NCBI RefSeq assembly: GCF_032444005.1
Contig: NC_091288.1
Span: forward strand, 203,484,001-203,548,000
DNA from: Ranitomeya imitator
Lineage: Eukaryota
Direction: 5' to 3'
DNA: 64,000 nucleotides
The position numbers and the translations under genes are program-made. The notes under the pieces were generated by a model. It was given only the letters and a program-made list of their open reading frames with translations. It did not search any database and was not told the origin of the DNA. Shown here one piece after another: positions 4,801 through 64,000 of this stretch (position 1 is the first letter of the stretch; every line of letters starts with the position of its first letter).

Positions 4801-7800
4801 ATTGCATCCACTGTGCCTAAAATCTGCAGAGATCTTGGAAAACCCCTTTTAATTGATATTGTCGGAGCTTTGCAAGCGGCAGTGAATAGAGACTGCAAGT
4901 AATCAGGAATATCCTTCCTACAGTATGTCCGCTGCTTCCATCATGGCTTGTGACATTGCACATATTGAGGTATTATGCAATTAGGAAGGGGCTTATCCAA
5001 AATCCAGGTAGGAATCGGAAAAACCTTACTCTTGGAAGTATTCTTACAGTCTAGGCTGACTGTGGCACCGCAGCTCGCTGCCTCCCTTGCTGGACGTCCT
5101 CCGTGTTGTGGCAAGCCTTCCATTAAGCCATTATGTCACATGAACGTGTGACACCACATTTTTTCAAAACCTAGGGATTTTTCATGCTTATTTAAAGGGG
5201 TTTTCCAAACTTCGCCCAGATCTTGGAAAACCCCTTCAAGTGATAACTTTTGCTGCACTCCCAAGTATTGCATGTAGATGTCTAAAACTTGCAGTGCCCA
5301 TTAGAGATGAGCAAATACATTCACAGGAGCCTAGTCCAGCCGCCATGACAGTAGCCCTGCTAACCACCTCCTGCCTGGCAGAATTGCCCGATTATATTGT
5401 CTGGCGCGACATTATCATCACATGGTGGCGCACACACGACGTCGCTCCACGCCGACTAATCAAGAGGAGCCAGGTAGGAGGCAGTGTGCAGCGCCACCAT
5501 TTGGAATAGCGCCTGTTCATATTACATGTAGGTTTGCAGAAACGTTCGGACCATTTACTCTTTATAGTGATGTCCAGCTTTCCCCAACAGCAGATGTTGG
5601 GGGGAGCAGAATTGGGCAGATTACATTTCAGCATGCCCAATCTTTTGCTTCTGTGGAAAGTTGTCTGGCAGCGATATCTTTGCTTCTTCCTAGTGAGAGC
5701 ACATGCACGATTTGCCTAGATGAGTGTGCATGTGTATAGTGGGAGGTCTTGCTGGGAGTGAAGACTGCCGTCAGCTGTCAGGTCCCCCGATCCTGGGATG
5801 GTGCCCACCTTTACAGTCCACTCTGGGTAATAAAAGGGGGTCCTGAGTGGAGCGCCTCCGCCCCATCTAGGCGCAGCAGTTATACGGACCCTGATATATA
5901 AATGCCTCCATCTTTTATCTTTCTTTTCTAAAGCTACGACAATCGCTGCAGACATCTCACCTCGCATCAAGTGCAGGAAAATATGTCCAAGAATTTGCCT
6001 TTTGTGGTCCGGTTCCAGTTGCCGAGTGGCGCCCATTCCTTCCAGGACCTGGTTTACGGCCGGACACATCACGACGTGGCCAGTGTGGAAGGAGACCCAG
6101 TGATCCTGAAGGGGGACGGCTTTCCCACCTACCACTTGGCCAATGTGGTGGATGACTATAAGATGGCAGTGAGTCACGTCCTGAGGGGAGAAGAATGGCT
6201 GATCTCCACCACCAAACATCTGCTCCTGTACCGAGCCTTGGGCTGGCAACCTCCAGCGTACGCTCACCTGCCGCTCCTGCTCAACAAAGATGGCAGCAAA
6301 CTGTCCAAACGCCAGGGGGATATATATATCCAGCACTTCGCCCAGAGAGGATTCCTGCCGGACGCCATATTGGACATCATTACCAACTGCGGATCAGGAT
6401 TCGCTGGTAATAATGGAGCGCGAGCGCGGGCTCATTCCGTGCGGGAGAATCAGAGTCCAGGAAAGCTGGGTGACAACAATACGTAGCATTTTACCAGCAG
6501 CAATTTTGGGCTCACTTTTTCTTTCCAGCATTTACTTCCAGCAAACGTTTGATTTTCTGAGTCTATGCATTTATTTATTTTTTTATTTTAGCTTTTTAAT
6601 ATCATTTTAATATTTTTAAAAGCTTTTTTAACTGCTTTAACTTTATTTTTTGCGTCCCCCCCCCCCCCCTCTTTAGAGGTTACACAGTGTTCTGCAATAT
6701 ATTCATCCATCTATTTATCCACTTGTGTGTCCCTCTCCCTCCATCCCTCTCTGTCTCCCTCCATCCCTCTCTGTCTCCCTCCATCCCTCTCTGTCTCCCT
6801 CCATCCCTCTCTGTCTCCCTCCATCCCTCTCTGTCTCCCTCCATCCCTCTCTGTCTCCCTCCATCCCTCTCTGTCTCCCTCCATCCCTCTCTGTCTCCCT
6901 CCATCCCTCTCTGTCTCCCTCCATCCCTCTCTGTCTCCCTCCATCCCTCTCTGTCTCCCTCCATCCCTCTCTGTCTCCCTCCATCCCTCTCTGTCTCCCT
7001 CCATCCCTCTCTGTCTCCCTCCATCCCTCTCTGTCTCCCTCCATCCCTCTCTGTCTCCCTCCATCCCTCTCTGTCTCCCTCCATCCCTCTCTGTCTCCCT
7101 CCATCCCTCTCTGTCTCCCTCCATCCCTCTCTGTCTCCCTCCATCCCTCTCTGTCTCCCTCCATCCCTCTCTGTCTCCCNNNNNNNNNNNNNNNNNNNNN
7201 NNNNNNNNNNNNNNNNNNNNNNNNNNNNNNNNNNNNNNNNNNNNNNNNNNNNNNNNNNNNNNNNNNNNNNNNNNNNNNNNNNNNNNNNNNNNNNNNNNNN
7301 NNNNNNNNNNNNNNNNNNNNNNNNNNNNNNNNNNCTCTTTCTGTCTCCCTCCATCTCTTTCTGTCTCCCTCCATCCCTCTCTGTCTCCCTCCATCCCTCT
7401 CTGTCTCCCTCCATCCCTCTCTGTCTCCCTCCATCCCTCTCTGTCTCCCTCCATCCCTCTCTGTCTCCCTCCATCCCTCTCTGTCTCCCTCCATCCCTCT
7501 CTGTCTCCCTCCATCCCTCTCTGTCTCCCTCCATCCCTCTCTGTCTCCCTCCATCCCTCTCTGTCTCNNNNNNNNNNNNNNNNNNNNNNNNNNNNNNNNN
7601 NNNNNNNNNNNNNNNNNNNNNNNNNNNNNNNNNNNNNNNNNNNNNNNNNNNNNNNNNNNNNNNNNNNNNNNNNNNNNNNNNNNNNNNNNNNNNNNNNNNN
7701 NNNNNNNNNNNNNNNNNNNNNNNNNNNNNNNNNNNNNNNNNNNNNNNNNNNNNNNNNNNNNNNNNNNNNNNNNNNNNNNNNNNNNNNNNNNNNNNNNNNN

Positions 7801-10671
7801 NNNNNNNNNNNNNNNNNNNNNNNNNNNNNNNNNNNNNNNNNNNNNNNNNNNNNNNNNNNNNNNNNNNNNNNNNNNNNNNNNNNNNNNNNNNNNNNNNNNN
7901 NNNNNNNNNNNNNNNNNNNNNNNNNNNNNNNNNNNNNNNNNNNNNNNNNNNNNNNNNNNNNNNNNNNNNNNNNNNNNNNNNNNNNNNNNNNNNNNNNNNN
8001 NNNNNNNNNNNNNNNNNNNNNNNNNNNNNNNNNNNNNNNNNNNNNNNNNNNNNNNNNNNNNNNNNNNNNNNNNNNNNNNNGATTTATGTGTCCATCTACA
8101 TTCGTACATATATACATATCCATCTTGTAGCCTGTAGATGGGTTTCACAGGAAGATGACTGGGTCCTTGGGCAGACTCCCAGCTAGCATGGCAACCTGTC
8201 ACCAATCCCTTCATAGTTTCGGGGGAAGCAATGAGCTCCGTAATTTATGCCCCACTGGGAACGCGCCACTTATATTTAAGTAGTTAAGCAGCAACGATCG
8301 GAGCAAGCTCCGATCGCTGCTGTTATAGAGACAGGTGCCGGCTGTATATCTTCTGACCCCTCTCCATAAACCGACTCCCTCCTTAGGACATAATGCTACA
8401 CCCTGTGGAAAGAAATGTTTTGATCAGTGGGAGTCTTGGTCCTGAGAGGAATGGACAGAAGTTCTCAGATTGTGCTGAGCCTAAAGTCTTGGACCTGGAT
8501 TTCCACCGATCAAAACTTTGTTTTTTTTTTTAATTGATTAGCACTGATCCCCAGTACCAGACGGAGCCCATGGAGAAGAGTCACGCTGTTCTGGGAAAAA
8601 AAGGAGCCATGTTTTTCTAATGTTATAGAGCTGTTGTATCTGTTCCTATCATGTAGGCAATCAGGTCGGCCGGACTCTGCCTGAACTCATCCGGCACTAC
8701 AACCTGCGGAGCACCAGCACTCACTCTGCTCTCCTGGATCTGGAGAAACTCCCCGAATTCAGCAGGTAAATGTTATCTGCGGCGAGTGTCCAGTCTGTAA
8801 TATTCCTGACCCCCCCCCCCCCCCCCCCCGTGCCAGTGGATATAATCGCATACACCCCCACTCACTCTCTTGTAGGGTTCACCTCTCCCGGTGGATTGAG
8901 GGTGCTGACACCCGTGCGCAGTTGGTGGCACAGCTGCAGACACTACTGCAAGAGAAGTACAAGGATGTGACGCTCGATAAAGACTATATGGAGAAGATAC
9001 TGGTGCTGAGGAAGGTAAGAGGGCGCTCCTTTCATAATGTCATAAAGGGGTATGCCATCGAAAGCACTCCCGAAAAGCGAGGGTCCAACTTTTCCAACAG
9101 TCGCAGCAGATGGACCCCCATTTTCGTAGCATTGCCTAGGTGTAGAATCCTTTACAGCAGAGTACTCCTTTAATCCGGAATTGTATAATACAACACAGAC
9201 CTGTAATATAATGTGGAATTATTGGACACCGTTCACATGCAGCGACTTCGTTCCTGGCCGGTTTTATGTACCCACATTGATCTCGGCTCTTCTGGGCTCC
9301 TTCGTTAGACTTCAGCAGCCTGATTGATTTCTGTGGACAACGACACTACTTTTCCTATGCGCCATTCATGAGCCATCCTCAGAGTCTCCAGTCCTTGTAT
9401 TATGTTGGTGTAATGAAGCTTTTCTCCCGTTTTATCTTCTAGGGACATTTGAACTTGCTGACGGATCTATTGTCTCCAGATTACTCGTTTCTGTGGATCC
9501 GGCCGTCGGTGCCGCAGGAAGAACTGCAACGTCTGTCAAGTGAAGCCGGCGAGATCGGGAGTGTTGTGGTGCGGTGTGTATCATTGGCAGTGCTCAGTTT
9601 GGGGTTGTGCAGACAAAATGTCCTGTCCGACCTGACATCGGGCGCGGGGTGACGCCACTGGTTGAAGCGACCTTTGGAAACCCAGAGGGAATCGTCTTAT
9701 TGGAATGGCATGTGACTTGCTGGGGCGTCAGGTGGTTTCCTCTGCAGTAGTAGGATGTGTTGTCAGTTTCACTCACTTGTCCACGTGTCATTTTGATGTT
9801 TTTAGGATTCTGCAGAACAATCCCAAATACACCAGCCTGGAACTGCTAAGTAAAGAGCTGAAGAGCCAACTGCAGCGGCTGGAAGCCACGAAGTACAGCA
9901 CCTCCATGAAACTTCTCCGGCTGGTGCTCAGCGGGCTCGAGGTGCGGTAAAAGTCATTGCTGGCATTTACCAATTCATAGAATGCAAATACTCCTATACA
10001 ATAGGTGCAATCTGTACAGCCGCACAGGGGCCCAATAGGTAACAGCCCACTTTCATCTCCGAAGAAGGTAAAATTGGGCATTATGATGACCGCAAAGGGC
10101 CCATATACTGTTCCTGCGCAGGGTCCTCTTCTCTCTGCGTCCGCTCCTGCCCAAACTCATTGGCCAAGTGCATTAAATCTGTCCAATGTCGCATTAATAC
10201 ATCAATGTGTCACTGTCCGAGCACGGACCATGATGCCTGGACTGTCCGCTGGTCTACTGATCTACTATGAAGCTATCAAGTTCAGGTCACGAGACCCACG
10301 GACGGTCCATACTCGTGTGAATGTGACATTGTAGAAACCCCAGCATTCAGCTTTACTTTCTGAACAGTTACATAAAATGAGTTCTGGTTGCTTTGATCAA
10401 AAAGGCCATGTTACTTTCTACTAGACCGTTGCTAACGAGGGTGCAGGATGGGGTCATATTGTATGATCGAACCAAGCGGCGCCAGTAATGTATAATGCAG
10501 AATGACGAAGTAATGTCTTGCTGTAGATCGTTGGTAATTTCCACTTTTGTGTCCCCAATAATAGACATTTCCTTCCTTTCTCTCTAGACCGGACCGAGTG
10601 TGGCTGAGATGTTGATGTCGTTGGGACCGGAGGAGTCAATTATACGTTTGCAGAAAGCTTTGTCCGGCTGA
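1799..10671 (+). CDS. EARS2: Mitochondrial glutamyl-tRNA synthetase (class I aaRS)
   Basis: Exons: 1799-1803 (putative micro-exon), 1924-2087 (alternative ATGs at 1931, 1976), 3661-3816, 3901-4090, 5934-6406, 8657-8765, 8876-9014, 9443-9573, 9806-9941, 10588-10671 (TGA). All junctions are GT-AG and in frame. Motifs: [10 protein letters not shown]|FLHLGG (HIGH-like), [39 protein letters not shown] (KMSKS-like), and C-terminal GPSVAEM. About 509-528 aa depending on the start used. Confidence 0.97.
2408..2652. repeat. 24-bp minisatellite (atggctgcMctgacccctgagctt), ~10 copies, EARS2 intron
   Basis: Direct inspection; produces the artefactual (MAALTPEL)n ORF. Confidence 0.95.
5192..5239. mobile_element. 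Minimal T2/Kolobok-type MITE remnant (TIRs only)
   Basis: ttaa-AGGGGTTTTCCAA, short spacer, TTGGAAAACCCCT-tcaa. The inverted repeat 5195-5208 / 5223-5236 is a perfect 14 bp. Confidence 0.6.
6727..7567. repeat. 20-bp polypyrimidine minisatellite (tccctccatccctctctgtc)n, interrupted and followed by N gaps
   Basis: Direct inspection; lies in the EARS2 intron after exon 5934-6406. Confidence 0.97.
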
Positions 10672-28600: not shown

Positions 28601-31600
28601 GGTCTTCACTTCTGCGCCAGTAATTCTAGCTGCTTCTTGGACTTAATAGACCCCATAAAGTCGTAATAAAATTCAGGAACCCCCATGATGACGGTGAAAG
28701 ATTGACGGGAGCAGAAGTGAAAATTACCTGCGACAAAGGTCTGGACTGGGCCGCAAATCACTTCGCCCAACTCTAATCTTGTGTTGTTGCTTCCTCTCTA
28801 TCAATACTATGTAGACACAGATTAAAATAAAATCTGTAGCAGCCGGCTCCCCCTAGATAACAGAAACCATGGAAAGTCTACTTCTAAAGCAGATAGATGA
28901 AGCTGCAACCCATAATGAGGTCCTGGTTATGGGGGACTTTAACTACCCGGATATTAACTGGGAAACAGAAACCTGTGAAACCCATAAAGGCAACAGGTTT
29001 CTACTAATAACCAAGAAAAATTATCTTTCACAATTGGTGCAGAATCCAACCAGAGGAGCAGCACTTTTAGACCTAATACTATCTAATAGACCTGACAGAA
29101 TAACAAATCTGCAGGTGGTCGGGCATTTAGGAAATAGCGACCACAATATTGTACAGTTTCACCTGTCTTTCACTAGGGGGACTTGTCAGGGAGTCACAAA
29201 AACATTGAACTTTAGGAAGGCAAAGTTTGAACAGCTTAGAGATGCCCTTAATCTGGTAGACTGGGACAATATCCTCAGAAATGAGAATACAGATAATAAA
29301 TGGGAAATGTTTAAGAACATCCTAAATAGGCAGTGTAAGCGGTTTATACCTTGTGGGAATAAAAGGACTAGAAATAGGAAAAACCCAATGTGGCTAAACA
29401 AAGAAGTAAGACAGGCAATTAACAGTAAAAAGAAACCATTTGCACTATTAAAGCAGGATGGCACCATTGAAGCTCTAAAAAACTATAGGGAGAAAAATAC
29501 TTTATCTAAAAAACTAATTAAAGCTGCCAAAAAGGAAACAGAGAAGCACATTGCTAAGGAGAGTAAAACTAATCCCAAACTGTTCTTCAACTATATCAAT
29601 AGTAAAAGAATAAAAACTGAAAATGTAGGCCCCTTAAAAAATAGTGAGGAAAGAATGGTTGTAGATGACGAGGAAAAAGCTAACATATTAAACACCTTCT
29701 TCTCCACGGTATTCACGGTGGAAAATGAAATGCTAGGTGAAATTCCAAGAAACAATGAAAACCCTATATTAAGGGTCACCAATCTAACCCAAGAAGAGGT
29801 GCGAAACCGGCTAAATAAGATTAAAATGGATAAATCTCCGGGTCCGGATGGCATACACCCACGAGTACTAAGGGAACTAAGTAATGTAATAGATAAACCA
29901 TTATTTCTTATTTTTAGTGACTCTATAGCGACAGGGTCTGTTCCGCAGGACTGGCGCATAGCAAATGTGGTGCCAATATTCAAAAAGGGCTCTAAAAGTG
30001 AACCTGGAAATTATAGGCCAGTAAGTCTAACCTCTATTGTTGGTAAAATATTTGAAGGGTTTCTGAGGGATGTTATTCTGGATTATCTCAATGAGAATAA
30101 CTGTTTAACTCCATATCAGCATGGGTTTATGAGAAATCGCTCCTGTCAAACCAATCTAATCAGTTTTTATGAAGAGGTAAGCTATAGGCTGGACCACGGT
30201 GAGTCATTGGACGTGGTATATCTCGATTTTTCCAAAGCGTTTGATACCGTGCCGCACAAGAGGTTGGTACACAAAATGAGAATGCTTGGTCTGGGGGAAA
30301 ATGTGTGTAAATGGGTTAGTAACTGGCTTAGTGATAGAAAGCAGAGGGTGGTTATAAATGGTATAGTCTCTAACTGGGTCGCTGTGACCAGTGGGGTACC
30401 GCAGGGGTCGGTATTGGGACCTGTTCTCTTCAACATATTCATTAATGATCTGGTAGAAGGTTTACACAGTAAAATATCGATATTTGCAGATGATACAAAA
30501 CTATGTAAAGCAGTTAATACAAGAGAAGATAGTATTCTGCTACAGATGGATCTGGATAAGTTGGAAACTTGGGCTGAAAGGTGGCAGATGAGGTTTAACA
30601 ATGATAAATGTAAGGTTATACACATGGGAAGAGGGAATCAATATCACCATTACACACTGAACGGGAAACCACTGGGTAAATCTGACAGGGAGAAGGACTT
30701 GGGGATCCTAGTTAATGATAAACTTACCTGGAGCAGCCAGTGCCAGGCAGCAGCTGCCAAGGCAAACAGGATCATGGGGTGCATTAAAAGAGGTCTGGAT
30801 ACACATGATGAGAGCATTATACTGCCTCTGTACAAATCCCTAGTTAGACCGCACATGGAGTACTGTGTCCAGTTTTGGGCACCGGTGCTCAGGAAGGATA
30901 TAATGGAACTAGAGAGAGTACAAAGGAGGGCAACAAAATTAATAAAGGGGATGGGAGAACTACAATACCCAGATAGATTAGCGAAATTAGGATTATTTAG
31001 TCTAGAAAAAAGACGACTGAGGGGCGATCTAATAACCATGTATAAGTATATAAGGGGACAATACAAATATCTCGCTGAGGATCTGTTTATACCAAGGAAG
31101 GTGACGGGCACAAGGGGGCATTCTTTGCGTCTGGAGGAGAGAAGGTTTTTCCACCAACATAGAAGAGGATTCTTTACTGTTAGGGCAGTGAGAATCTGGA
31201 ATTGCTTGCCTGAGGAGGTGGTGATGGCGAACTCAGTCGAGGGGTTCAAGAGAGGCCTGGATGTCTTCCTGGAGCAGAACAATATTGTATCATACAATTA
31301 TTAGGTTCTGTAGAAGGACGTAGATCTGGGTATTTATTATGATGGAATATAGGCTGAACTGGATGGACAAATGTCTTTTTTCGGCCTTACTAACTATGTT
31401 AGTGGCAGCAGCAGAAAGAGATTTTTTTTATTACTCACCTACTGCTCTGCAAATGGGAGCCAGTGGTTTGGGAACTNNNNNNNNNNNNNNNNNNNNNNNN
31501 NNNNNNNNNNNNNNNNNNNNNNNNNNNNNNNNNNNNNNNNNNNNNNNNNNNNNNNNNNNNNNNNNNNNNNNNNNNNNNNNNNNNNNNNNNNNNNNNNNNN

Positions 31601-34660: not shown

Positions 34661-35333
34661 TTAAGTTTGCACGAAAAAATATCTGATCTGATGCAGATGA
34701 GAAGAAATATAAAAAAAAAAAAGTTAAAAATATAGAATATACTCCACATTGTGAGTGATTTCCACCGTCCTAGCAGGACTTCCATGCTGGTTTCGCCACA
34801 TTCTGCTCCTCAGGGGCTCTAGCGGTCACATGCAATGAAATGTTACTTGAAGGGGTCGTGGTGGAAGTCGCTAATTTGCAACATGATTTTGTGTAGATTT
34901 GCTGCAGAAGTGTTTTGATTAAATCAACAAAGTGTGAACATACTCTAATAAAGAAAAGCGGCTCTAGATTTCTTATATTCATTGCTAATAAAAGCATTTA
35001 TTAAAGCAGACCTGTCGGGAGAGATGAGCGGACTTCCTAAACACCCATGATGGTCAGAGGTGACCATAATTTTGGCTGCATAATGTAGCACACATTAACG
35101 GAAGTAAAGGCAATAATCCTCGTGTTTCCGAGACACGGCTGCATTTTCTCCTGCGTCATCACTTCTGCATATTTTGCTTTCATTTTTAACTGGTAGAACT
35201 GGAAATATGAGTCCTTGTGACTTATTTCCCGGGTTTAATGGTTGACGCCTCTGGAGTGAGTGCAACAGGAGATCTGCGTTGGATCCGGTATTGCCAGCCG
35301 CTGTTATCGGTCTTTTGATTGATTTTTGCCACA

Positions 35334-36587
35334 ATGGAGTCGCTGAACGCCGAGCTGATCTGCCCCATCTGTCTGGACCTCTATGATGACCCCGTGATGC
35401 TGAGCTGTGGGCACAACTTCTGCCAGGAGTGCATCAATCATGCCCTGGATTTTCCCAATGGATCTACAGACTTTAAATGTCCCGAGTGCAATGCAGTGTT
35501 TCTCCGACGTCCTGCCCTGCAGCGAAACCTGAAGCTGCGAAACATAGTGCAGCACCTACAAAGGGCTTCTCGCAACAATCTACAACGTTCTCTCTTGGAG
35601 CTACGCAGGGAGCAAGATGCCACCGAAAAAAGGCTTCATGGCCTCAACGAACAGAAAAGTCAAATTCAGGAAAGCTCACAGGCTCTGGAAATCGTCTTAA
35701 ACACATTTTTTACCATGATCGAAAAAGATATCAGGAGATCCCGGAAGATTGTTCTGGGGGAAATCTCTAGGAAAAAGGAGCACGCGCTGGTGCAGGTCTC
35801 CAAATTAATGGAGGAGCTGGCGTTAAGGAAGCAGGAGCTGTCCAGGAGGGTACATGAGACGCAGGAGCTGCTCCTCGTGGGCGGTCCTGTAGTGATGTCA
35901 CAGTTGGAGCCTGAAATAGAGGACGGGAAATTGCGAAGTGATAGCGCTGCAATTTTTTGGGATGAAACGCCCATCAGTTTGACTTTTAAGAAGTGCTTGT
36001 CCGGCGTGGTTCATATGTTTTCAGAATTAATTCAAATAATGCCCGAGCCAAAGACCTTGGACATAATCCTGGATGTAAACACCGCCTGTAAGGATATACA
36101 CGTATCGCCTGACCGCAGATCCGCCTCCAATATCGGCGCCCACCAGGGGCATCCAGAGGGGCCGGAGCGCTTTACCATCTGCCAGCTTCTGAGCACCTGT
36201 AGCCTTTCAACGCAGAGTTATTGGAAAGTGGATGTCAGTAAAGCCGAGGAATGGATTATCGGAGTGGCTTACCATAGCATGGGCCGGAAAGCGCTGACCA
36301 GTGACGCCTACATAGGGTACAACAACAAGTCGTGGGGTCTGGAGTGCCGCCAAAGCCTTTCTGCCCTGCATAATAACGTGAGGCAAGAAGTGACCGTCAA
36401 CTCTCCCGTCAAGCTGCTCGGGGTGTATGTGAACTATGAATCCGGACTAATATCGTTTTATCGGCTCAACAATCAATTCAGACACTTGTTTAGCTTCTCT
36501 GCCACCTTCACCGAGAGACTTCACGCTGCCTTCTGCGTGTTCCCAAATGGTTGCATAACAATCCGAAAAAGGAAGAGGGATCGTTAA
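35334..36587 (+). CDS. Intronless TRIM-like E3 ligase: C3HC4 RING, coiled coil, PRY-SPRY (B30.2); no B-box; 417 aa
   Basis: Good Kozak gccacaATGG. RING CPICLDLYDDPVMLSCGHNFCQECI...CPEC; linker PALQRNLKLRNIV; PRY ILDVNTACKDIHVS, PERF; SPRY YWKVDV, WIIGVAY, IGYNNKSWGL, LGVYVNYESGLISFY, HLFSFSATFTERLHAAF. Confidence 0.9.
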   Translation: MESLNAELICPICLDLYDDPVMLSCGHNFCQECINHALDFPNGSTDFKCPECNAVFLRRPALQRNLKLRNIVQHLQRASRNNLQRSLLELRREQDATEKRLHGLNEQKSQIQESSQALEIVLNTFFTMIEKDIRRSRKIVLGEISRKKEHALVQVSKLMEELALRKQELSRRVHETQELLLVGGPVVMSQLEPEIEDGKLRSDSAAIFWDETPISLTFKKCLSGVVHMFSELIQIMPEPKTLDIILDVNTACKDIHVSPDRRSASNIGAHQGHPEGPERFTICQLLSTCSLSTQSYWKVDVSKAEEWIIGVAYHSMGRKALTSDAYIGYNNKSWGLECRQSLSALHNNVRQEVTVNSPVKLLGVYVNYESGLISFYRLNNQFRHLFSFSATFTERLHAAFCVFPNGCITIRKRKRDR

Positions 36588-37810: not shown

Positions 37811-38513
37811 TGATTCTACCGACTTTTATGTCCTTTGGGAAATTTTGAGGTCATGAGAGGGTAAAAAATGATCTTACCGCAACCATGTATGCATCATTAT
37901 TCTGTGTCAGCTCTTATCATTGAATGAAGACAATGTTGAATCATGCATTGCAATTTATTTCATTCCTTCTCCATTCATTGTCTGTTCATCTTCTGTGATC
38001 TCTGTCACTGCTTATGCAGAGCACAGCAGTCAAGATGAGTTTGTTATTGACTGCTGCGCTCTGCATAGGCAGTGATCAAGATGACAAAGCTCAATTCATT
38101 ATGCTGAGCTTTGTCATTTCTGCTGCTGCATATACAGATCGCTGCAATCAAGGTGCGCTTGTCATCCGGCTGCTGTGCTCTGCATAGGCAATGACCAAAA
38201 TGACAAAGCTCAATTCATATACTGTGCTTTATTTGGTTTGCTACCCCTATAGAGCGCAGAAGTCAAGATGAATATGTTATCAGCTGCTGTGCTCTGCATT
38301 AGCAGTGACCAAGATGACAACGGTCAATATATTATACGGAGCTTTGTCATTTTGGTTGCTTCCTCTGCAGAGCGCACCCGCAGATGACAAACTCATGCCA
38401 CCTTCCGTGCTCTGCATAACCTCAGTCCGTAACCAGATATCATATATGATAACATATAATCCGGTAACTGTCATCACACAACCGCACTTGCTGTTGTAAT
38501 TAATAGCTCATTG

Positions 38514-38555
38514 CCTCCCCAACATGTTTCGCCTAACCAGCTTCATCAGGGGTTT
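38514..38555 (-). ncRNA. Minimal type-I hammerhead ribozyme motif
   Basis: Minus strand reads CCC-CUGAUGA-A-GCU(GGUUA)GGC-GAAA-CAUG-UU-GGG: canonical core, stem II of 3 bp, palindromic ACAUGU stem III, stem I of 3 G-C bp, GUU cleavage triplet. Confidence 0.7.
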
Positions 38556-52774: not shown

Positions 52775-55451
52775 ATGCCTGTTCTTTCTTCCAACCATCA
52801 AACTTCTCACATGGAGAAGGACAACATTCGAGAAGATGACAGCTTAACCAACCTACAGTGGCTTCAAGACTTTTCCATTTGGAGCTCAGACTTGACTTCA
52901 TTTGCTATTTCTTGTCCTCCTGCAACGAACAAGACCCAAGGTCCGTGTAGCCCTCCAGCTGGAGATACAGCCTCCTTCCAGGCTCCTCGTACAGGGAAAC
53001 AAAGGTCCAACAACGGATCCAATGCCTGGCCGTCTTTACCGTCTTCTGGACCAAATCCTATGCAGGAAGTGGATTATAGAACAAATCCTAATGTTAAACC
53101 GCCATATTCGTATGCCACCCTCATATGCATGGCTATGGAGGCCAGCCAGCAGAGAAAACTGACCCTGTCCGCCATATACAACTGGATCACCCAGAACTTC
53201 TGTTACTATAGGCATGCTGACCCAAGCTGGCAGGTAAGATATGTTCACTATCTAGTTGGAGGTCCTAGCAAGAGGGATAGCCTGAGCTGCCACCTACCTT
53301 GTCCATACCTTATGTGGTCCGCGGAGTCACCACAGTCAGGTATGACTGCTACCCAAAGGTCTAGTAAACCATATTGTGGCCATCAAAAGTGAAGTAAGTT
53401 AAGGCCTACTTGGTTTTAGGACTGGTACCAGCTCAAGCTTTCCCAGTATCAAGGATGATTGAAGTGTATGAGTGTGTATGTTGTAGATGTAGGTATGTGG
53501 TAGAAGACCAAGGGTAGTCCTGTAATCAGAAAGGTGTCCCCCATAAGAGCTTGTTTATACTATTTTTTGCTGAGTTTTTTTAATGGAAACTGAGCAGAAA
53601 CTACAATTTTTTGAGGAGTTTTGTGTTTTTGAGGAAAATTTGGAGAGTCACATCTCAGTTTCTGCTCCAAAATCTCTTTAGAAAGCTTAGTGTGAGCATA
53701 CCCTAACTGTTCCCTGAAATAAGCCCCCAATCTGTTCCTTATCATTTCGTCCACATACATTGCATAACTAGTTTTCTCCCAGACCTTCCAATTCAAAACT
53801 CTAGAAACTCGACGTAAAGTCCTCTAACGGGTCCCTTAAGGACTTATATATCTGGTTCATCTGTACCATTTAATGGCGCTACTTGTACAGGATCAAGGTA
53901 GGACCTGATTTGAAAACTTGAGGATCAGCAAATCTTAGCTATATGTCTAAATGAGAAGACGGAGATTGAAATGGTGATGATTGACATGAAGTTTAGGATA
54001 TTGATGACCCGAAGTATCTGCATACAGAAGGTAATAGCTATAGGACAAAGGTAACTGACCTTCCCTAGTGACAGGAGATGTAACGCAATAATTGAGAGTC
54101 ATATCATGAGGTAAAGACACATTTTTGAAGCCCCTTCAGATGTGGTTGCTAATTCTGCATCCCCTATAATTACATCCCCATCGGGCAGCACTATGGACAT
54201 AGACTATCTTGCATAGCCTGAATTTTTGGTTATGCTTCTTCCTAGAAACATATCCTAGGATATTATTACATCTGTCTTTTTATTTGGTTTTGGCCCAGAG
54301 AGCATCGGTTTCTACTCTTACGTCTTGATAGGACATGAAAGCATGAAAGGACCTCGGTGTAAAGGGCATAAGAGGAGTTTTGTATGGAGGAATCAATGAC
54401 CTGCTCATGTTGAGATGGGAATCCTCCTGTGATTACGGCACATTGCATTATTCATGACTAGCCTCATCTTTTGGTGAGGTCCTTGCCAGGTGTCCTTCTG
54501 TAGTTAACAGTAGGCTACCAGCCTGGCTTTGAGAGGCAGCTGCATAATGGAGCACTTTGTCCTGCCGGTAAGGGACACCTGAGCAGGTATGGTGTGGGGG
54601 ATGACAGAGATGATGGGATCATTCATCTAATTTTCAGTAGTCATACTCCATTAACCAGACCTGAGGTAGGCAACGTGTTGCACAAATTGTGGTGGGTCTA
54701 CACATCTTACTACGGAATATGCATAGACCTGTACATTAGAGTGCCTGTCTCATCATTCTTTCCATTTTCCATACATTAGTTTTTTTTCCCATTTCAGAAT
54801 TCCATCCGGCACAACCTCTCTTTGAATAAATGCTTCATGAAAGTCCCCAGAGGAAAAGATGAACCTGGGAAAGGTGGATTTTGGCAGATGGATCCTCGTT
54901 ACGCTGATATGTTCGTGAATGGAGTATTGCGAAGGAGAAGGATGCCAGCTTCTCATCTTGACCCTCCAAGGTGCAGCAACGTACCGATCCACCATCCCTA
55001 CCAGTCATCTGTTCGACCAAATAACCGCCAAAACCCAAATTCTTCTTGCAGTTACAAGCAGCTAAGGAGGCAAGAGAAGCCCAGTCCTGTTTTGCCGGCC
55101 CTGAGGTCACAGGAACGACATGGGGACAATTTCTTGTCTTCTGAAAGTGATCATCTGCGTGGAAGCAACTTTGATGACCTTGATCTGCAGACAGCTTTAA
55201 TATCAATGTGGTGGGAAGAAGACATAGGACCTTCTGGGGTCAATGCCTCAGTTGTGAACACTTCCAATTTGGAAGTGTCCCATCAGGAACCTGCCATAAT
55301 GGATAGCCAATGGTTCCTGCCTACTGACCACCATCCAACTTGGCAAGAGTTGAAAGAGGAACCTGTGGCGAATCAGTGGTTCATAGACAATGGTTATGTC
55401 GAAGATGTTTTGTATGAGTGCCCACCATGGGAAAGGGCTGAGACATTATGA
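52775..55451 (+). CDS. foxj1.2: Forkhead box J1-family transcription factor (foxj1.2 / foxj1b-type), 370 aa
   Basis: Exons 52775-53233 and 54798-55451. FoxJ1 N-terminal motif [15 protein letters not shown]. Forkhead domain [23 protein letters not shown]...[24 protein letters not shown]|[33 protein letters not shown], with the phase-0 intron in WQ|NS. Acceptor at 52746 lies upstream of the ATG; AATAAA at 55614. The paralog assignment (J1.2 rather than J1) rests on length and divergence from memory. Confidence 0.88.
53547..53703. mobile_element. Degenerate Harbinger-type MITE in the foxj1.2 intron
   Basis: TAA on both sides; imperfect TIRs gagcttgtttatact / agtgtgagcataccc. Confidence 0.45.
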
Positions 55452-59576: not shown

Positions 59577-60244
59577 TAATTTGAGACCAAGATAACTCAC
59601 TCTGATGTAAGCAGGAACGTCTCCCCTGGTGAAATGGATCTCGCGGGCATGTGTGGCACCGCTCCCTCACTAACACACAAGCTGTGAGCAAACACAAGCT
59701 CGATAAATATTCCAAGACTGAGTGAATTATTAATTGGATCCCGTCACCTGGCAAGGACCTGTCACGCACCTGTCGGCCCCACACTCATCCCTCCGCTCTG
59801 TAATGTGCTCTCATCTCAACTTACCCCATAACATGGAGGCTGACGCAACAAACTCTTCACTGTGGGTAAATTAGCATAGTAGTAGGCCATCAGGTCCCAC
59901 CGGTGGCTAATATCTAGGCTTCTCTTAAATTGGGTACACGCCGTGACACCAACGATTGCAGACAGGTCAAGATGTACCAGCTGCTGATGGCGTCATGTTA
60001 AGACATAGTATTCAGCCATTTTCATAATGGCAGGTGTAATTATTCAACATAAGCCTGGGGCCAATACGTGAGGCTTATATATAGTATTTGTTATATACAG
60101 ATTGTCAAACGCAAAAACAAATCCCTAAACTCTAGACTGCAAAATAAAACTTATTATAGCATCCTATTAACAGTGAGGAACTAGAGTACAGTGAGGCATA
60201 AAAGAGTACCAATATTAACACATTATAACTCCACTATAGACCCA

Positions 60245-60283
60245 TTCCCCTGAGGAAGCTGGTCAGGCGAAACATGTCGGGAG
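60245..60283 (+). ncRNA. Minimal type-I hammerhead ribozyme, apparently intact
   Basis: UUCCC-CUGAGGA-A-GCU(GGUCA)GGC-GAAA-CAUG-UC-GGGAG. Stem I UUCCC/GGGAG is 5 bp, stem III is the palindrome ACAUGU, the triplet is GUC with predicted cleavage after 60278. Confidence 0.75.
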
Positions 60284-60342
60284 ACACTATAAGATTCTTT
60301 TAACACCATATGCAACTGTATCATGCATGACTAACAATCTAA

Positions 60343-60530
60343 GGCCGGGGTCACACTTGCGTGTGCAATGCGAGAAACTCGCATCAATGCCCAGCACTGC
60401 CGCTGGCACTTGGAATTGTAGGGTTCAGCTGCAAATACATGCAGCCGCATGCTCCGGTCCTGAGTGCCGGCGGCAGTGCCGGGCATTGATGTGAGTTCCT
60501 CGCATTGCACACGCAAGTGTGACCCCGGCC
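60343..60530. mobile_element. PIF/Harbinger-type palindromic MITE
   Basis: TIRs GGCCGGGGTCACACTTGCGTGTGCAATGCGAG / reverse complement, with TAA duplication at 60340-60342 and 60531-60533. Confidence 0.92.
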
Positions 60531-60589
60531 TAAATGTGATACTGTTTATGGACTGCAGCCATCCATGTTATTGATATAGTATCACCCCC

Positions 60590-60630
60590 TATCTTAATGT
60601 TTCGCCTAGCCAGCGTCCTCAGGGTGGTCT
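60590..60630 (-). ncRNA. Degenerate hammerhead motif
   Basis: Minus strand CCC-CUGAGGA-C-GCU(GGCUA)GGC-GAAA-CAU-UA-AGAU; core intact, stems I and III damaged. Confidence 0.5.
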
Positions 60631-60920
60631 ATAACGTACATAATACGGTATTTAGCCATTTTCATAATAACGACAGGTGTGATTATTTAACATAAGCCCA
60701 GAGCCAATACGTGAGGCATATATATATATATATATATACACTGTATATACATATATAGCATTTGTTATATACAGATTGTCGAATGCAAAAATCCCTAAAA
60801 ATTAGACTGTAAAGCAAAACTTATTTTTTTTTATCCAATTAACAGTGAGGGACTAGAGTACAGTGAGGCATAAAAGTATACTAATATTAACATATTATAT
60901 CATCACACCATTATAAACCC

Positions 60921-60960
60921 ATGCCCCTGAGGACGCTGGTCAGGCGAAACATGTCAGAGA
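60921..60960 (+). ncRNA. Hammerhead motif with disrupted stem I
   Basis: GCCC-CUGAGGA-C-GCU(GGUCA)GGC-GAAA-CAUG-UC-AGAGA; core, stem II and stem III intact, stem I mismatched. Confidence 0.55.
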
Positions 60961-60969
60961 GGTTATGAA

Positions 60970-61107
60970 TAGTGATGAGCGAATATACTAGTTACTCGAG
61001 ATTTCCTAAGCACGCTTGGGTGTCCACCGAGTATTTTTAGTGCTCGGAGATTTAGTTTTCTAAACTCTCAAGAAATCTCGAGTAACGCGTATATTCGCTC
61101 ATCACTA
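60970..61107. mobile_element. hAT-type MITE
   Basis: TIRs TAGTGATGAGCGAATA / TATTCGCTCATCACTA; 8-bp TSD gttatgaa / tttatgaa (7 of 8 match). Confidence 0.88.
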
Positions 61108-61210
61108 TTTATGAATGATTCTTTCAACAGCATGAGACTGAATCAAGCATGACAAAAACAATCTAAATGTGATGTGCAGTCATCACATTTATTTTATATT
61201 TTATTACCTC

Positions 61211-61250
61211 CTATCCTAATGTTTCGCCTGACCAGCGTCCTCAGGGGGAT
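61211..61250 (-). ncRNA. Degenerate hammerhead motif
   Basis: Minus strand AUCCCC-CUGAGGA-C-GCU(GGUCA)GGC-GAAA-CAU-UA-GGAU; core and stem II intact, stem III loop no longer palindromic. Confidence 0.5.
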
Positions 61251-64000
61251 GAGTCTACAAAGGATCTATGAGATCTTAATATTGGCACTCTTTTATACCC
61301 TCCGATTAATATAGTACTTATATTTACTGTCTAGACTTCAGGGCCTTTTTTGCCTGTTTATAACAAATGTTTTAGCTTACGCCCACCTAAACCTGCTATT
61401 ATTATTCTGCTTACATATGGTAGGCAGCCTCTGCCATATTACAGGTGGAGCAGAATGTATTGATACAGGCAGCAGGCACCGTGTCCATCCCTTTAGGTCA
61501 GTCAGACAATATCGTGTGACGTGACCACGCGACGGTAATTTCCCGATCTCTTCCTTGTGTTACACGTAAAGAATAAAGCCACGTAACCTCATCTTTCAGT
61601 CGCGCGCAGATCGGGTGTCGGGAGGGTTAACCCTTTTACAGCCGAGCTGGGTGTAAGGAACTATCACTTGTGGTATTGGAAGGAGTTTTTTTTGTTGACT
61701 GGTAGAAGCTGCTGGGGTTTGTAGTCCCACAGAGAGATATTAACAATCTTTATGGTCACTTTAATGGTTGTTACTGGTGGGTGCCCGGATTGGGGTAGCA
61801 AATTTTATGGCACTATGTATAAAAAGGTGCACCATATGGTCCCATTAACCAGGTCCTTCCTGGCCGCCAATATTCCATAATACTGCTAATCCACTGGCAG
61901 CAAAGGGCTCGGCCATTCTGAACAGGTCCATCAAGTTTTTAACCCTTCGTACCATCACCTAGGAATGTTCGGCATGATCCGACCTGCCCGGGTGGTGGAC
62001 AGCCCCCCTTCGAGTCTTTCTTTGATACCTCCTAGGGCATTGTGACTGGCAGGGACACAACGTGCACTATCACCTGGGCCTGCCGAAACATGTCCCCTTG
62101 TGTCACCACATGCATTCCTCCACACATAGGCTTAACTGTTTGATGGCCAGAGGTCCAGTGTAAATGTCGCAAATCTGTACAATTCTGGGGGGGGGGGGGG
62201 ACTTAGGTTTTATTCAGACGGAAGCATCTTGCTTCCATATTACAGCCGCAAATCCTGGCCAGACTGCGCGTTTATCAAAATCGCCTTTCTGCCCTTCTGT
62301 GAAAATCAGAGCGTACTTGGATGTCCAATTTTTTCACAGACCCATTAACTTGCAATTTAGTCCTCCAAGGCAGCGGGACCGAGACAGGTTTACTTCGGCG
62401 CTGGTGATGCCATATCGGGCATTCTGGGGTCCTCTGACACTTACTAGCCCCCTGCCACGTCATGTGCGGCTGGTGAGTGACCATTGTGCCCCCAATACCA
62501 GGCAGAGGGAGTCTACACGGTTCAATTTTAATAAACACATGAGCTCAAAACCGGCCATGCAAGTCTATGGGTCCGTAAAAAAAAATAAATAAAAATTGGA
62601 CTGCACTCGGATGACATCAAAGCGTGGTCCGATTTTCACAGATCGTCAATATGGAGAAGGTGCAGAAACTTATTTTTCTCTCCTTGTACTAGAAAAACTG
62701 ATGACACTCGGACCACACTCTGGTCAGAATAATTGATGCGTTTTTCTCCTACGTGGAAAATACTGACAACGTTAATGAGCCCTGAATGAGATATCTGAAA
62801 TCTCATGCACATTGCTTATTTTATTTCCTTCCAGATTTGTAGCAATTTCAGCCTCTTTCACCTATTTTAATAGGGAAAAAAAACACATTAAAAAATGCAT
62901 CAAAATACAAGACGACGTGTTTTTCCTAACAACGCATAAGTATTTGCAACAGAAAAAAAAAAAACTAAAAGTGGGCAAATACCCTTACACAGATGATCTT
63001 ATCCCCAAAAACAGCGCCACCTCTGTTCACAGGTTGTGTTTAGTATTGCAGATGAGCTGCAGTGCTACAAGATTGCTCCATATCTTCTCCTAAGCTGTAA
63101 CGCGTGTGCTCCCCCTCGTCTACAAAGGCATCGGTATAGGAGATACTCGGCGTGGAAGGGGGTTTGTTAGTATAGGGAAATTGCACAACTAGCAACTCCT
63201 TAAAGGCGCCGTATAAATCGAACAGAAACTGGAACGCAGCGCAAGTCCTCATAGGAGCGGTCATGATGCCTTGCAATGCTCCTAGGGGCGGTCAGGACCA
63301 CTTTTTAGATGAGACCCCATCAATGGCCAGGAAACAATGGTTCTAATATACTTTATTATTTGTCAACACTTTTGTCATAAATAGAAAACATCCAAAGGGT
63401 TTCACAATGACTGGTGCAGCGATGGCGCAAAAAGCAACCAAAATGTTGTGTACGCACACTCGATCACCCACGCACACTGTATAACCTGACATACAAGACA
63501 CACGTATTCATGTACAGCTAGGCGGGGGCAGAAATACCGGAGAAGTGTCTCGCGCCCTAGATTTACAGAATGACAACTGGTAGGATTCTTATATCATGTG
63601 CAATTAAAGTGTGCAATACACTACACACACAAAACCATATGATGGAGAACGGCCGCACAGTCCGTACACCCAGGACCGATGCAAAGCAGAACATACCGAT
63701 ATCCCGAGACATTGCTGAAAGTTTACCAAACATTGGACAGAAGTTGTGGTCTGGACGCCAAAACGGAGGATCAGAAGTTCCCCGCCCGGTTCGGCTTTCA
63801 TATACTTTCAATGAAGCCTCATTTTTCGAGTTGGAGGTCAGATGAGCTCTTATGTTCTCTCATTTATATGTGCAATCAAAATATAGGACGCGTGAAAAAG
63901 TTTTGTGAAAGTGCAGAAACTTTAAAGTTATTTGTCCAGTTTTTTTTTTTATGTCCTCCATATGATGTGAATCCCCTCCGTCCAATGTCAAATCGAGCAC

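What the first reader, a model, noticed from the sequence alone, without database searches (positions are those of the whole stretch)
60005..61365. Tandem unit carrying hammerhead ribozyme cores on both strands (+,-,+,-)
Seen: four CUGAGGA-N-GCU..GGC-GAAAC cores at ~60250 (+), ~60615 (-), ~60930 (+) and ~61235 (-). Subtracting the two later MITE insertions (191 and 146 bp) from the core-to-core distances (677 and ~622 bp) gives a ~480-bp monomer with one ribozyme per polarity facing each other, and the array ends in an inverted copy of the 5' segment. Established: minimal type-I hammerheads with a palindromic stem III occur in Penelope-like element pseudo-LTRs, non-LTR retrozymes and newt satellite 2, where tandem copies self-cleave as dimers to release monomeric or circular RNA; these are usually single-polarity. 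Inference: this is either an inverted-pLTR Penelope derivative or an ambisense retrozyme-like family whose monomer could be processed from both strands, as in symmetric rolling-circle RNAs. The shared stem II sequence favours inverted duplication of one ribozyme.
Basis: partly seen in the sequence, partly recalled or inferred. Interest (0 to 1): 0.8.

Follow-up and report, generated by a model that had tools for sequence, protein, structure and literature searches.

The report
Decayed hammerhead retroelement, inverted and duplicated
Four hammerhead-ribozyme motifs really lie here on alternating strands, but they are the worn remains of an old Penelope-type (retrozyme-like) mobile element that was laid down as a tail-to-tail inverted pair and later duplicated; only one motif still looks able to cut, so this is an ordinary fossil and not an RNA processed from both strands.

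Summary
Observation confirmed. Four identical-format hammerhead cores lie at 60250(+), 60599(-), 60927(+) and 61221(-). None is expected by chance. The two MITE sizes (191 and 146 bp with their target duplications) and the roughly 480-bp period are correct.

Interpretation only partly supported. The motifs fit the minimal Penelope-type hammerhead of Cervera and de la Peña 2014: a bulged base after A9, a G10.1-C11.1 pair and a palindromic ACAUGU helix III. Only the copy at 60245-60283 keeps every element. The second plus copy has lost helix I. Both minus copies share a lesion that removes the GUC site and the palindrome.

The plus and minus copies are homologous over about 150 nt but are far more diverged (K about 0.35) than the two plus copies are from each other (K about 0.15). 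The "monomer" is therefore best read as a later duplication of about 450 bp of an older tail-to-tail pair. The meeting point of the pair coincides with the element's natural 3' end, shown by a solo copy at 38.4 kb.

No reverse transcriptase or GIY-YIG ORF is linked. Read depth is about single-copy. The locus is shared by two other sampled organisms, where core CpGs decay. One likely RNA data set shows no coverage.

Earlier notes of this scan report many hammerhead retrozymes elsewhere in this genome. This is a known kind of low interest.

The parts
60005..60555 (+). Plus copy E1: 5' segment, hammerhead and an 86-nt 3' region (excluding the MITE1 insert). It is interrupted by MITE1. The left limit is only where homology with E2 begins.
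60245..60283 (+). Hammerhead of E1, the only copy with all elements: CUGAGGA, bulged A, helix II (G-C, C-G, U-G), GAAA, palindromic ACAUGU, GUC, 5-bp helix I. Predicted cleavage is between 60278 and 60279.
60343..60530 (.). MITE1, 188 bp, with 92-nt inverted arms and a TAA target duplication at 60340-60342 and 60531-60533 (Harbinger-like). It is a later insertion from a very high-copy family.
60553..60558 (.). Centre T1 (CTGCAG) of the tail-to-tail junction. Homology of E1 with the solo copy at 38.4 kb ends exactly at 60555.
60556..60647 (-). Inverted copy D: a short tail, a dead hammerhead core (60599-60622) and about 25 nt upstream of it. It is cut off at the duplication junction 60647/60648.
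60648..61177 (+). Plus copy E2, about 85-87% identical to E1. It carries a (TA)n expansion at 60710-60757 and is interrupted by MITE2.
60922..60960 (+). Hammerhead of E2. The core, palindrome and GUC (C17 at 60955) are intact, but helix I is lost (AGAGAG in place of GGGAG).
60970..61107 (.). MITE2, 138 bp, with an 8-bp target duplication at 60962-60969 and 61108-61115 (hAT-like). It is absent from the orthologous contig of organism C.
61165..61190 (.). Centre T2 of the second tail-to-tail junction: a perfect 10-bp hairpin stem with a 6-nt loop.
   Evidence: (I8)
61178..61382 (-). Inverted copy C: a short tail, a dead hammerhead core (61221-61244) and about 140 nt of the 5' segment with a 28-nt gap. 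It is 5'-truncated.
   Evidence: (I2, I3, I7)
38423..38555 (-). Solo 5'-truncated relative F: a hammerhead with canonical CUGAUGA and a GUU site, plus about 100 nt of 3' region. It sits next to a Tc1-like fragment and defines the family's 3' end.

Best explanation
This is a fossil, non-coding insertion of a Penelope-like-element (PLE) type hammerhead element. It is either the ribozyme-bearing terminal (pseudo-LTR) part of a PLE or a non-autonomous 'retrozyme' derivative of one.

Shown:
- Two copies of the same element lie tail to tail (E on the plus strand, C on the minus strand).
- They meet at the element's natural 3' terminus, 86 nt downstream of the ribozyme cleavage site, with a small palindrome at the junction.
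- The two plus copies E1 and E2 pair with each other, and the two minus copies D and C pair with each other.
- Two unrelated MITEs then inserted, one in each unit.

Inferred:
- The inverted pair arose by PLE-style reverse transcription at the tail of a resident copy. This could be priming on both DNA strands or homing to the tail, or else self-priming at a 3' hairpin.
- A segment of about 450 bp, running from 60005 into the inverted copy, was later duplicated in tandem, giving the order +,-,+,-.
- When the family was active, tandem or neighbouring plus-sense hammerheads would have paired through the palindromic ACAUGU helix III and cut after GUC.
- Today only the E1 motif is intact. Its only partner, E2, has lost helix I, and the minus motifs cannot form a cleavage site.
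- In a plus transcript each ribozyme would also be locked in a long hairpin with its inverted partner.
- The locus is therefore most likely inert and evolving neutrally.
For: - Motif: all five copies have an extra base between A9 and 10.1, and a G10.1-C11.1 pair. The three copies E1, E2 and F have a palindromic 15.1-16.1 hexamer. These are the features listed for PLE min-HHRs in PMC4209133.
- Opposite strands: that paper also reports dual min-HHRs about 100-700 bp apart on opposite strands.
- 3' end: the 3' region of E1 aligns to solo copy F with z 6.2, and the alignment stops exactly at the palindrome centre, 60555. A terminus 86 nt past the cut site matches internal reverse-transcription initiation about 85-92 nt downstream of the cut site in an anole PLE (PMC11167929).
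- Architecture: tandem plus inverted insertions, and palindromes at inverted junctions, are described for PLEs. Tail-to-tail is the expected outcome of 3' self-priming on a sense template (PMC8557442; PMC3846280).
- Order of events: K(E1,E2) is 0.14-0.17 against K(E,C) of 0.34-0.36. D and C are 82% identical over 61 ungapped nt and share the ACAUUA lesion.
- Age and neutrality: depth is about single-copy at 80% likeness or more. An orthologous locus exists in organism B (with both MITEs) and in organism C (without MITE2). G10.1 shows CpG-type changes in two cores of organism C.
- Coding capacity: no reverse transcriptase or GIY-YIG ORF lies in the flanks or elsewhere in the window.
- Folding: hairpin z is -4.9 for unit 1 and -10.5 for unit 2.
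Against: - No autonomous PLE or other close family member could be retrieved, so the PLE link rests on motif type, 3'-end geometry and architecture, not on sequence homology to a PLE.
- Rfam hammerhead models do not recognise the motif.
- No target-site duplication flanks the whole structure.
- The tails of the inverted copies (37-41 nt) align only weakly to the plus-copy 3' region (z 1.8-2.6), so the exact nature of the tail-to-tail junction is uncertain.
- Absence of RNA rests on contigs of a single run that is only guessed to be RNA.
- No cleavage assay exists.
Confidence: 0.75

Rival explanations
1. Ambisense retrozyme: a ~480-nt monomer with one working hammerhead per polarity, processed from both strands as in symmetric rolling-circle RNAs.
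For: Cores of identical format lie on both strands at a regular period. At the moment of inverted duplication both polarities must have carried an intact motif.
Against: Both minus cores have ACAUUA in place of ACAUGU, and UAA or UAG in place of GUC. Their helix I is 1 bp. The lesion is shared, so it predates the duplication. Plus-minus divergence (K about 0.35) is far greater than plus-plus divergence. The composite is about single-copy. Core CpGs decay in organism C. No RNA coverage was seen in the one likely RNA run. Self-complementarity would sequester both ribozymes.
Confidence: 0.04
2. A true retrozyme array: the two units were made at insertion by rolling-circle or template-jumping reverse transcription of an RNA that already contained the inverted segment. 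They were not made by a later DNA-level duplication.
For: Tandem head-to-tail copies are the normal product of PLE and retrozyme insertion (PMC4209133, PMC7229834, the 2026 preprint). The unit length is within the reported range of 51-972 bp.
Against: There are only two units. The first unit is cut off inside the inverted copy, while the last unit carries a longer inverted copy. The left limit of the unit is defined only by the duplication itself. No other copy of the composite is seen at 80% likeness or more. The data do not separate the two routes.
Confidence: 0.15
3. An exapted ribozyme: the intact E1 hammerhead, about 4.8 kb downstream of the forkhead coding ORFs and on the same strand, acts in the host transcript, for example in 3'-end processing.
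For: E1 keeps every motif element while its three neighbours decayed. It is sense to the forkhead ORFs at 52775-55451.
Against: A minimal hammerhead of this type needs a second palindromic partner to cut. Such motifs show low activity even as dimers (PMC4209133). One survivor out of four is unremarkable. No RNA contig covers it. No conservation test was possible.
Confidence: 0.04
4. Chance motif matches in AT-rich repetitive DNA.
For: Rfam hammerhead models give no hit.
Against: There are 0 matches in 100 shuffles against 5 observed. Features not in the search pattern recur: a palindromic helix III, GUC or GUU, a complementary helix I, and a shared 3' region.
Confidence: 0.01

Closest known systems
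Minimal hammerheads (min-HHR) of metazoan Penelope-like elements (Cervera and de la Peña 2014, PMC4209133)
   Same: The open ends lie in helix I (type I). There is an extra unpaired base between A9 and 10.1, a G10.1-C11.1 pair, a short helix I (5 bp), and a 1-2 bp helix III inside a palindrome, implying action as a dimer. The motifs are dispersed and mostly single or truncated. Pairs on opposite strands 100-700 bp apart are reported. About 9,000 motifs are reported in a frog genome.
   Different: Helix II here is only 3 bp with a 5-nt loop, whereas 6-8 bp is typical of the families described. No PLE ORF is linked at this locus.
Non-LTR retrozymes of animals (Cervera and de la Peña 2020, PMC7229834; Li, Clavereau and Pollet 2026 preprint)
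   Same: Both are non-coding, carry a type I hammerhead in direct repeat units of a few hundred bp, occur in amphibians, and are thought to derive from PLE pseudo-LTRs.
   Different: There are only two units, and each unit contains an inverted dead copy of the ribozyme segment. There is no evidence of circular or linear monomer RNA. The copy number is about one. The repeat is more simply explained as a local duplication.
Complex tandem/inverted insertions of Penelope-like elements (Arkhipova et al. 2013, PMC3846280; Craig et al. 2021, PMC8557442; Frangieh et al. 2024, PMC11167929)
   Same: Both have 5'-truncated inverted copies adjacent to direct copies, a palindrome at the inverted junction, and a 3' terminus some 90 nt beyond the ribozyme cut site.
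   Different: The older junction here is tail-to-tail, which those papers call the less frequent arrangement. The head-to-head junction (60647/60648) is probably a by-product of the duplication.
Newt satellite 2 and salamander hammerhead repeats
   Same: Both are amphibian type I hammerheads with a weak, palindromic helix III that cut as dimers.
   Different: Those are long single-polarity satellite arrays that are abundantly transcribed. This is a two-unit, mixed-polarity, decayed single locus.

Membership tests
Hammerhead ribozyme, Rfam models (Hammerhead_1 and relatives) | Score at or above the family's gathering threshold with the covariance model | tested here: not met
   No hammerhead hit at gathering score on the window. 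None at E<=10 on 2.5 kb, nor on 76-nt and 91-nt queries around E1 and F.
PLE-type minimal hammerhead (Cervera and de la Peña 2014) | Conserved core boxes CUGANGA and GAAA at the right spacing | tested here: met
   Present in all five copies.
PLE-type minimal hammerhead (Cervera and de la Peña 2014) | [quoted passage not shown] | tested here: met
   Bulged A or C followed by G...C in all five copies.
PLE-type minimal hammerhead (Cervera and de la Peña 2014) | Palindromic 15.2-16.2 / loop 3 allowing a dimeric helix III, followed by a cleavable NUH triplet | tested here: inconclusive
   Met in E1, E2 (ACAUGU + GUC) and F (ACAUGU + GUU). Not met in D and C (ACAUUA + UAA/UAG).
PLE-type minimal hammerhead (Cervera and de la Peña 2014) | Helix I of about 4-5 bp flanking the core | tested here: inconclusive
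   E1 5 bp, F 3 bp, E2 0 bp, D 1 bp, C 1 bp.
PLE-type minimal hammerhead (Cervera and de la Peña 2014) | Self-cleavage | not testable with these tools
   No assay was possible. Published min-HHRs cut weakly, and only as dimers.
Penelope-like element | ORF with a telomerase-like reverse transcriptase and a GIY-YIG endonuclease | tested here: not met
   Pfam scans were run on 10 of the 53 window ORFs of 110 aa or more, and on 10 of the 17 ORFs of 65 aa or more in 56.5-64 kb. They found only a LINE-type reverse transcriptase at 28.9-31.3 kb, a TRIM-like ORF and forkhead exons. The element is at most a non-coding fragment or derivative.
Penelope-like element | Tandem and/or inverted repeat architecture with 5' truncation, and a 3' end set downstream of the ribozyme | tested here: met
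   compared with the descriptions read.
Non-LTR retrozyme | Head-to-tail tandem units, each with a type I hammerhead, non-coding | tested here: inconclusive
   There are two direct units with plus-strand motifs 677 bp apart (486 bp without MITE1). The unit also holds an inverted copy, and the repeat may be a secondary duplication.
Non-LTR retrozyme | Expression as linear and circular monomer RNAs | tested here: inconclusive
   No RNA run was listed as holding the stretch. One run guessed to be RNA has depth 0 on the element. Only contigs were available, so ends and circles cannot be seen.
Non-LTR retrozyme | Multi-copy family in the genome | tested here: not met
   Summed contig depth on the element is 9-24 against a baseline of about 9-10, and about 1e5 on the MITEs, at 80% likeness or more. 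Only one diverged relative lies in the 64-kb window.

The most novel reading that the evidence does not exclude
Homology between the inverted and direct copies stops at ...GAAACAU, 3 nt from the predicted cleavage site, and the direct copy ends exactly at the family's 3' terminus. One event could therefore have made the inverted arm. Reverse transcription would have primed at the 3' hairpin or tail of a sense RNA, then switched template onto the 3' end of a self-cleaved RNA. If so, the locus would record both in vivo hammerhead cleavage and the rarely documented tail-to-tail (sense-template self-priming) route of Penelope-type insertion.
Probability: 0.12. Interest if true: 0.45.

Novelty: new member of a known kind. 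Interest (0 to 1): 0.15.

Why it matters
It matters little on its own. The locus adds one dated, decayed example of a hammerhead-bearing Penelope-type insertion in a frog genome. It shows how alternating-strand ribozyme motifs can arise without any ambisense biology: an inverted pair formed first, and a local duplication followed. Its modest value is as a worked case. The solo copy fixes the element's 3' end 86 nt past the cut site, in line with the internal initiation of reverse transcription shown biochemically for an anole PLE. The tail-to-tail junction with a central palindrome is the less common PLE arrangement. It also warns that motif scans for hammerheads on both strands will flag such fossils.

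Tried and rejected
1. Rfam at gathering and at lax E-values found no hammerhead family hit, only weak miRNA-like hits on the MITE hairpins. I take this as a limit of the models for minimal motifs, not as evidence against the motif.
2. I scanned public collections for the core pattern to obtain more family members. The strict pattern gave 0 hits in metagenomes. The looser pattern gave 3 hits in metagenomes that lack the palindrome and helix I and sit in prokaryote-like contigs, so they are chance. Viral contigs gave 0.
3. A search for RNA runs listed none. Only contigs could be laid, so transcript ends, strands and circles could not be examined.
4. A target-site duplication around the whole structure was not found at 6 bp or more.
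5. Plain minimum-energy folding of the 57-nt motifs, alone or as dimers, does not return the hammerhead fold and is uninformative for minimal motifs.
6. I first read the coincidence of the E1 and E2 5' ends as evidence for an RNA-mediated origin of the second unit. I rejected this because that 5' end is defined only by the E1/E2 homology itself.
7. I considered that the 37-41-nt tails of the inverted copies are homologous to the plus-copy 3' region. The alignments are not significant (z 1.8-2.6), so this is left open.
8. A look-up of earlier scan notes by sequence came back blank.
Full report
**What is there**

Reading 59700-61700 and a pattern search confirm four cores of identical format. 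They are CTGAGGA, one base, an 11-nt hairpin, then GAAAC. They lie at 60250-60273(+), 60599-60622(-), 60927-60950(+) and 61221-61244(-).

A fifth, related core with canonical CTGATGA lies at 38526-38549(-). One hundred dinucleotide-preserving shuffles of the window gave no match. A looser pattern gave 6 matches against 0.05 expected.

MITE1 is 60343-60530, 188 bp with 92-nt inverted arms, flanked by TAA on both sides. MITE2 is 60970-61107, 138 bp, flanked by an 8-bp duplication (and the ruler). Removing 191 and 146 bp from 677 and 622 bp leaves 486 and 476 bp.

Short-read contigs of the same organism cover every junction without a difference. Contigs of a second organism cover them at about 95-97% identity. 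The arrangement is therefore real DNA.

**What kind of hammerhead**

Rfam's hammerhead models do not score any copy. There is no hit at gathering score, none at E<=10 on 2.5 kb, and none on a 76-nt query around the best copy.

The motif does match the minimal hammerhead defined for Penelope-like elements by Cervera and de la Peña (PMC4209133). That definition comprises:
- the core boxes;
- a G10.1-C11.1 pair;
- a short helix I;
- a helix III reduced to a palindrome, so that two motifs must pair to form an active dimer.

A feature table computed for the five copies gives the following.

| Copy | Strand | Core | 15.1-16.1 hexamer | Triplet | Helix I |
|---|---|---|---|---|---|
| E1 | + | 60250-60273 | ACAUGU, palindromic | GUC | 5 bp |
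| E2 | + | 60927-60950 | ACAUGU, palindromic | GUC | 0 bp (AGAGAG where E1 has GGGAG) |
| D | - | 60599-60622 | ACAUUA, not palindromic | UAA | 1 bp |
| C | - | 61221-61244 | ACAUUA, not palindromic | UAG | 1 bp |
| F | - | 38526-38549 | ACAUGU, palindromic | GUU | 3 bp |

All five copies have the bulged base and the G-C closing pair. E1 spans 60245-60283, with predicted cleavage after 60278.

By the accepted rules only E1 is intact. Its only possible dimer partner, E2, is damaged. The same paper reports that even bona fide motifs of this type cut weakly in vitro, and only as dimers.

**Anatomy of the repeat**

With the MITEs removed, unit 1 (60005-60647) and unit 2 (60648 onward) align along their whole length.

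Each unit consists of three parts:
- a plus-strand copy with a 5' segment of about 245 nt, the hammerhead and a 3' region;
- a small palindrome;
- an inverted copy.

The inverted copy is short in unit 1: D runs from 60647 back to 60556. It is long in unit 2: C runs from about 61382 back to 61178 and covers about 140 nt of the 5' segment. The minus-strand cores are therefore not an independent ribozyme. They are part of an inverted copy of the same element.

The solo copy F at 38423-38555(-) fixes the element's 3' end. Its 3' region aligns to that of E1 with z 6.2. The alignment runs from the first base after the cut site to exactly 60555, the centre of the palindrome, although 20 further bases were offered.

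The plus copy therefore ends 86 nt after its cleavage site, and the inverted copy starts there. The two copies lie tail to tail.

**Order of events**

- The two plus copies differ by K = 0.14-0.17.
- Either plus copy differs from C by K = 0.34-0.36.
- D and C are 82% identical over 61 ungapped nt and share the lesion that destroys the cleavage site.

The pairing (E1,E2) and (D,C) means that a block holding both orientations was duplicated after the inverted pair had already diverged and the minus motif had already died.

The left limit of the "unit" (60005) is known only from the E1/E2 homology. Nothing therefore requires an RNA-mediated origin of the second unit. A local duplication of about 450 bp, with its junction at 60647/60648, is enough.

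MITE1 and MITE2 each sit in one unit only, so they came later. MITE2 is absent from the contig of a third organism, which joins 60966 to 61132 with 21 nt. Both MITEs are present in the second organism.

**Evidence that the locus is old, rare and unconstrained**

- At 80% likeness or more, summed contig depth on the element is 9-24, against about 9-10 on the unique flanks and about 1e5 on the MITEs. The composite is therefore essentially single-copy.
- Within the window only F is related.
- In the third organism, G10.1 is changed by a CpG-type transition in both the E2 and the C core (60935 G>A and 61236 C>T). This is expected of neutral decay.
- No run was listed as holding the stretch as RNA. 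The one run guessed to be RNA covers the MITEs but has depth 0 on the element. This is weak evidence, because only contigs were available.
- A plus-strand transcript of either unit would fold into a long hairpin in which the ribozyme pairs with its inverted partner (z -4.9 and -10.5). That competes with the catalytic fold in both polarities.

**Link to Penelope-like elements**

No reverse transcriptase or GIY-YIG ORF was found among the ORFs scanned (10 of the 53 of 110 aa or more in the window, and 10 of the 17 of 65 aa or more in 56.5-64 kb). The only reverse transcriptase is a LINE-type ORF at 28869-31304. The element is thus non-coding here.

The PLE link is by resemblance, on four counts:
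- the motif type;
- the report of dual min-HHRs on opposite strands about 100-700 bp apart in PLE-rich genomes;
- the "complex tandem/inverted" architecture with 5'-truncated inverted copies, and palindromes at inverted junctions;
- the position of the 3' end.

On the last point, in the anole element studied biochemically the cut site is 26 nt into the ORF and reverse transcription starts at +111 to +118, that is 85-92 nt further on. The enzyme nicks and extends both DNA strands.

[quoted passage not shown] Earlier notes of this scan call the genome a poison frog and report many hammerhead retrozyme and PLE insertions elsewhere in it. I did not re-test those.

**Verdict**

The [quoted passage not shown] reading is supported.

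The ambisense-retrozyme reading is not supported. The minus motifs are dead and share a lesion that predates the duplication. The composite is unique at this level of similarity. The period comes from a later duplication.

What remains open is how the tail-to-tail pair was made: homing to the tail of a resident copy, or 3' self-priming. It is also open whether the end of inverted homology, 3 nt from the cleavage site, reflects a template switch onto a self-cleaved RNA. The short, diverged tails do not allow a decision.

This is a new, decayed member of a known kind, and its interest is low.

Noticed in passing
window 38423-38555 (-): A solo, 5'-truncated relative of the element. It has a canonical CUGAUGA core, palindromic ACAUGU, a GUU site and about 100 nt of 3' region. 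It lies directly downstream of a Tc1/mariner-like transposase fragment.
   Followed up: partly
window 34790-34813 (-): Another CUGAGGA...GAAAC match with different stem II letters and no clear palindrome or helix I. It may be a decayed motif of another family, or chance.
   Followed up: no
window 28869-31304 (+): An uninterrupted 811-aa ORF with endonuclease/exonuclease/phosphatase and reverse transcriptase domains. It is a LINE-type element with an open reading frame still intact.
   Followed up: partly
window 35319-36587 (+): A single 422-aa ORF with RING, TRIM coiled-coil, PRY and SPRY domains. It is a TRIM-family gene or retrocopy without introns over this span.
   Followed up: no
window 52775-53392 and 54822-55451 (+): Two ORFs that together carry a forkhead domain.
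   Followed up: no
window 60343-60530 and 60970-61107: Two MITE families with summed contig depth near 1e5 in three sampled organisms. Both are also present in contigs of a run guessed to be RNA. MITE2 is absent at this site in organism C, so it was active after that split. Both give weak miRNA-precursor-like Rfam hits because of their hairpins.
   Followed up: partly
window 6680-8214: ORFs of 467-499 aa are open in several frames on both strands over the same 1.5 kb. This points to a stop-free simple or low-complexity repeat.
   Followed up: no
window 38000-38450 (-): Repeated blocks with recurring 'tgcagagcac' and 'gacaaagctc' motifs, probably a short tandem or foldback repeat. They abut the 3' end of the solo hammerhead copy.
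   Followed up: no
window 60710-60757: A (TA)n and mixed AT microsatellite expanded in unit 2 only. Short-read contigs break there.
   Followed up: no
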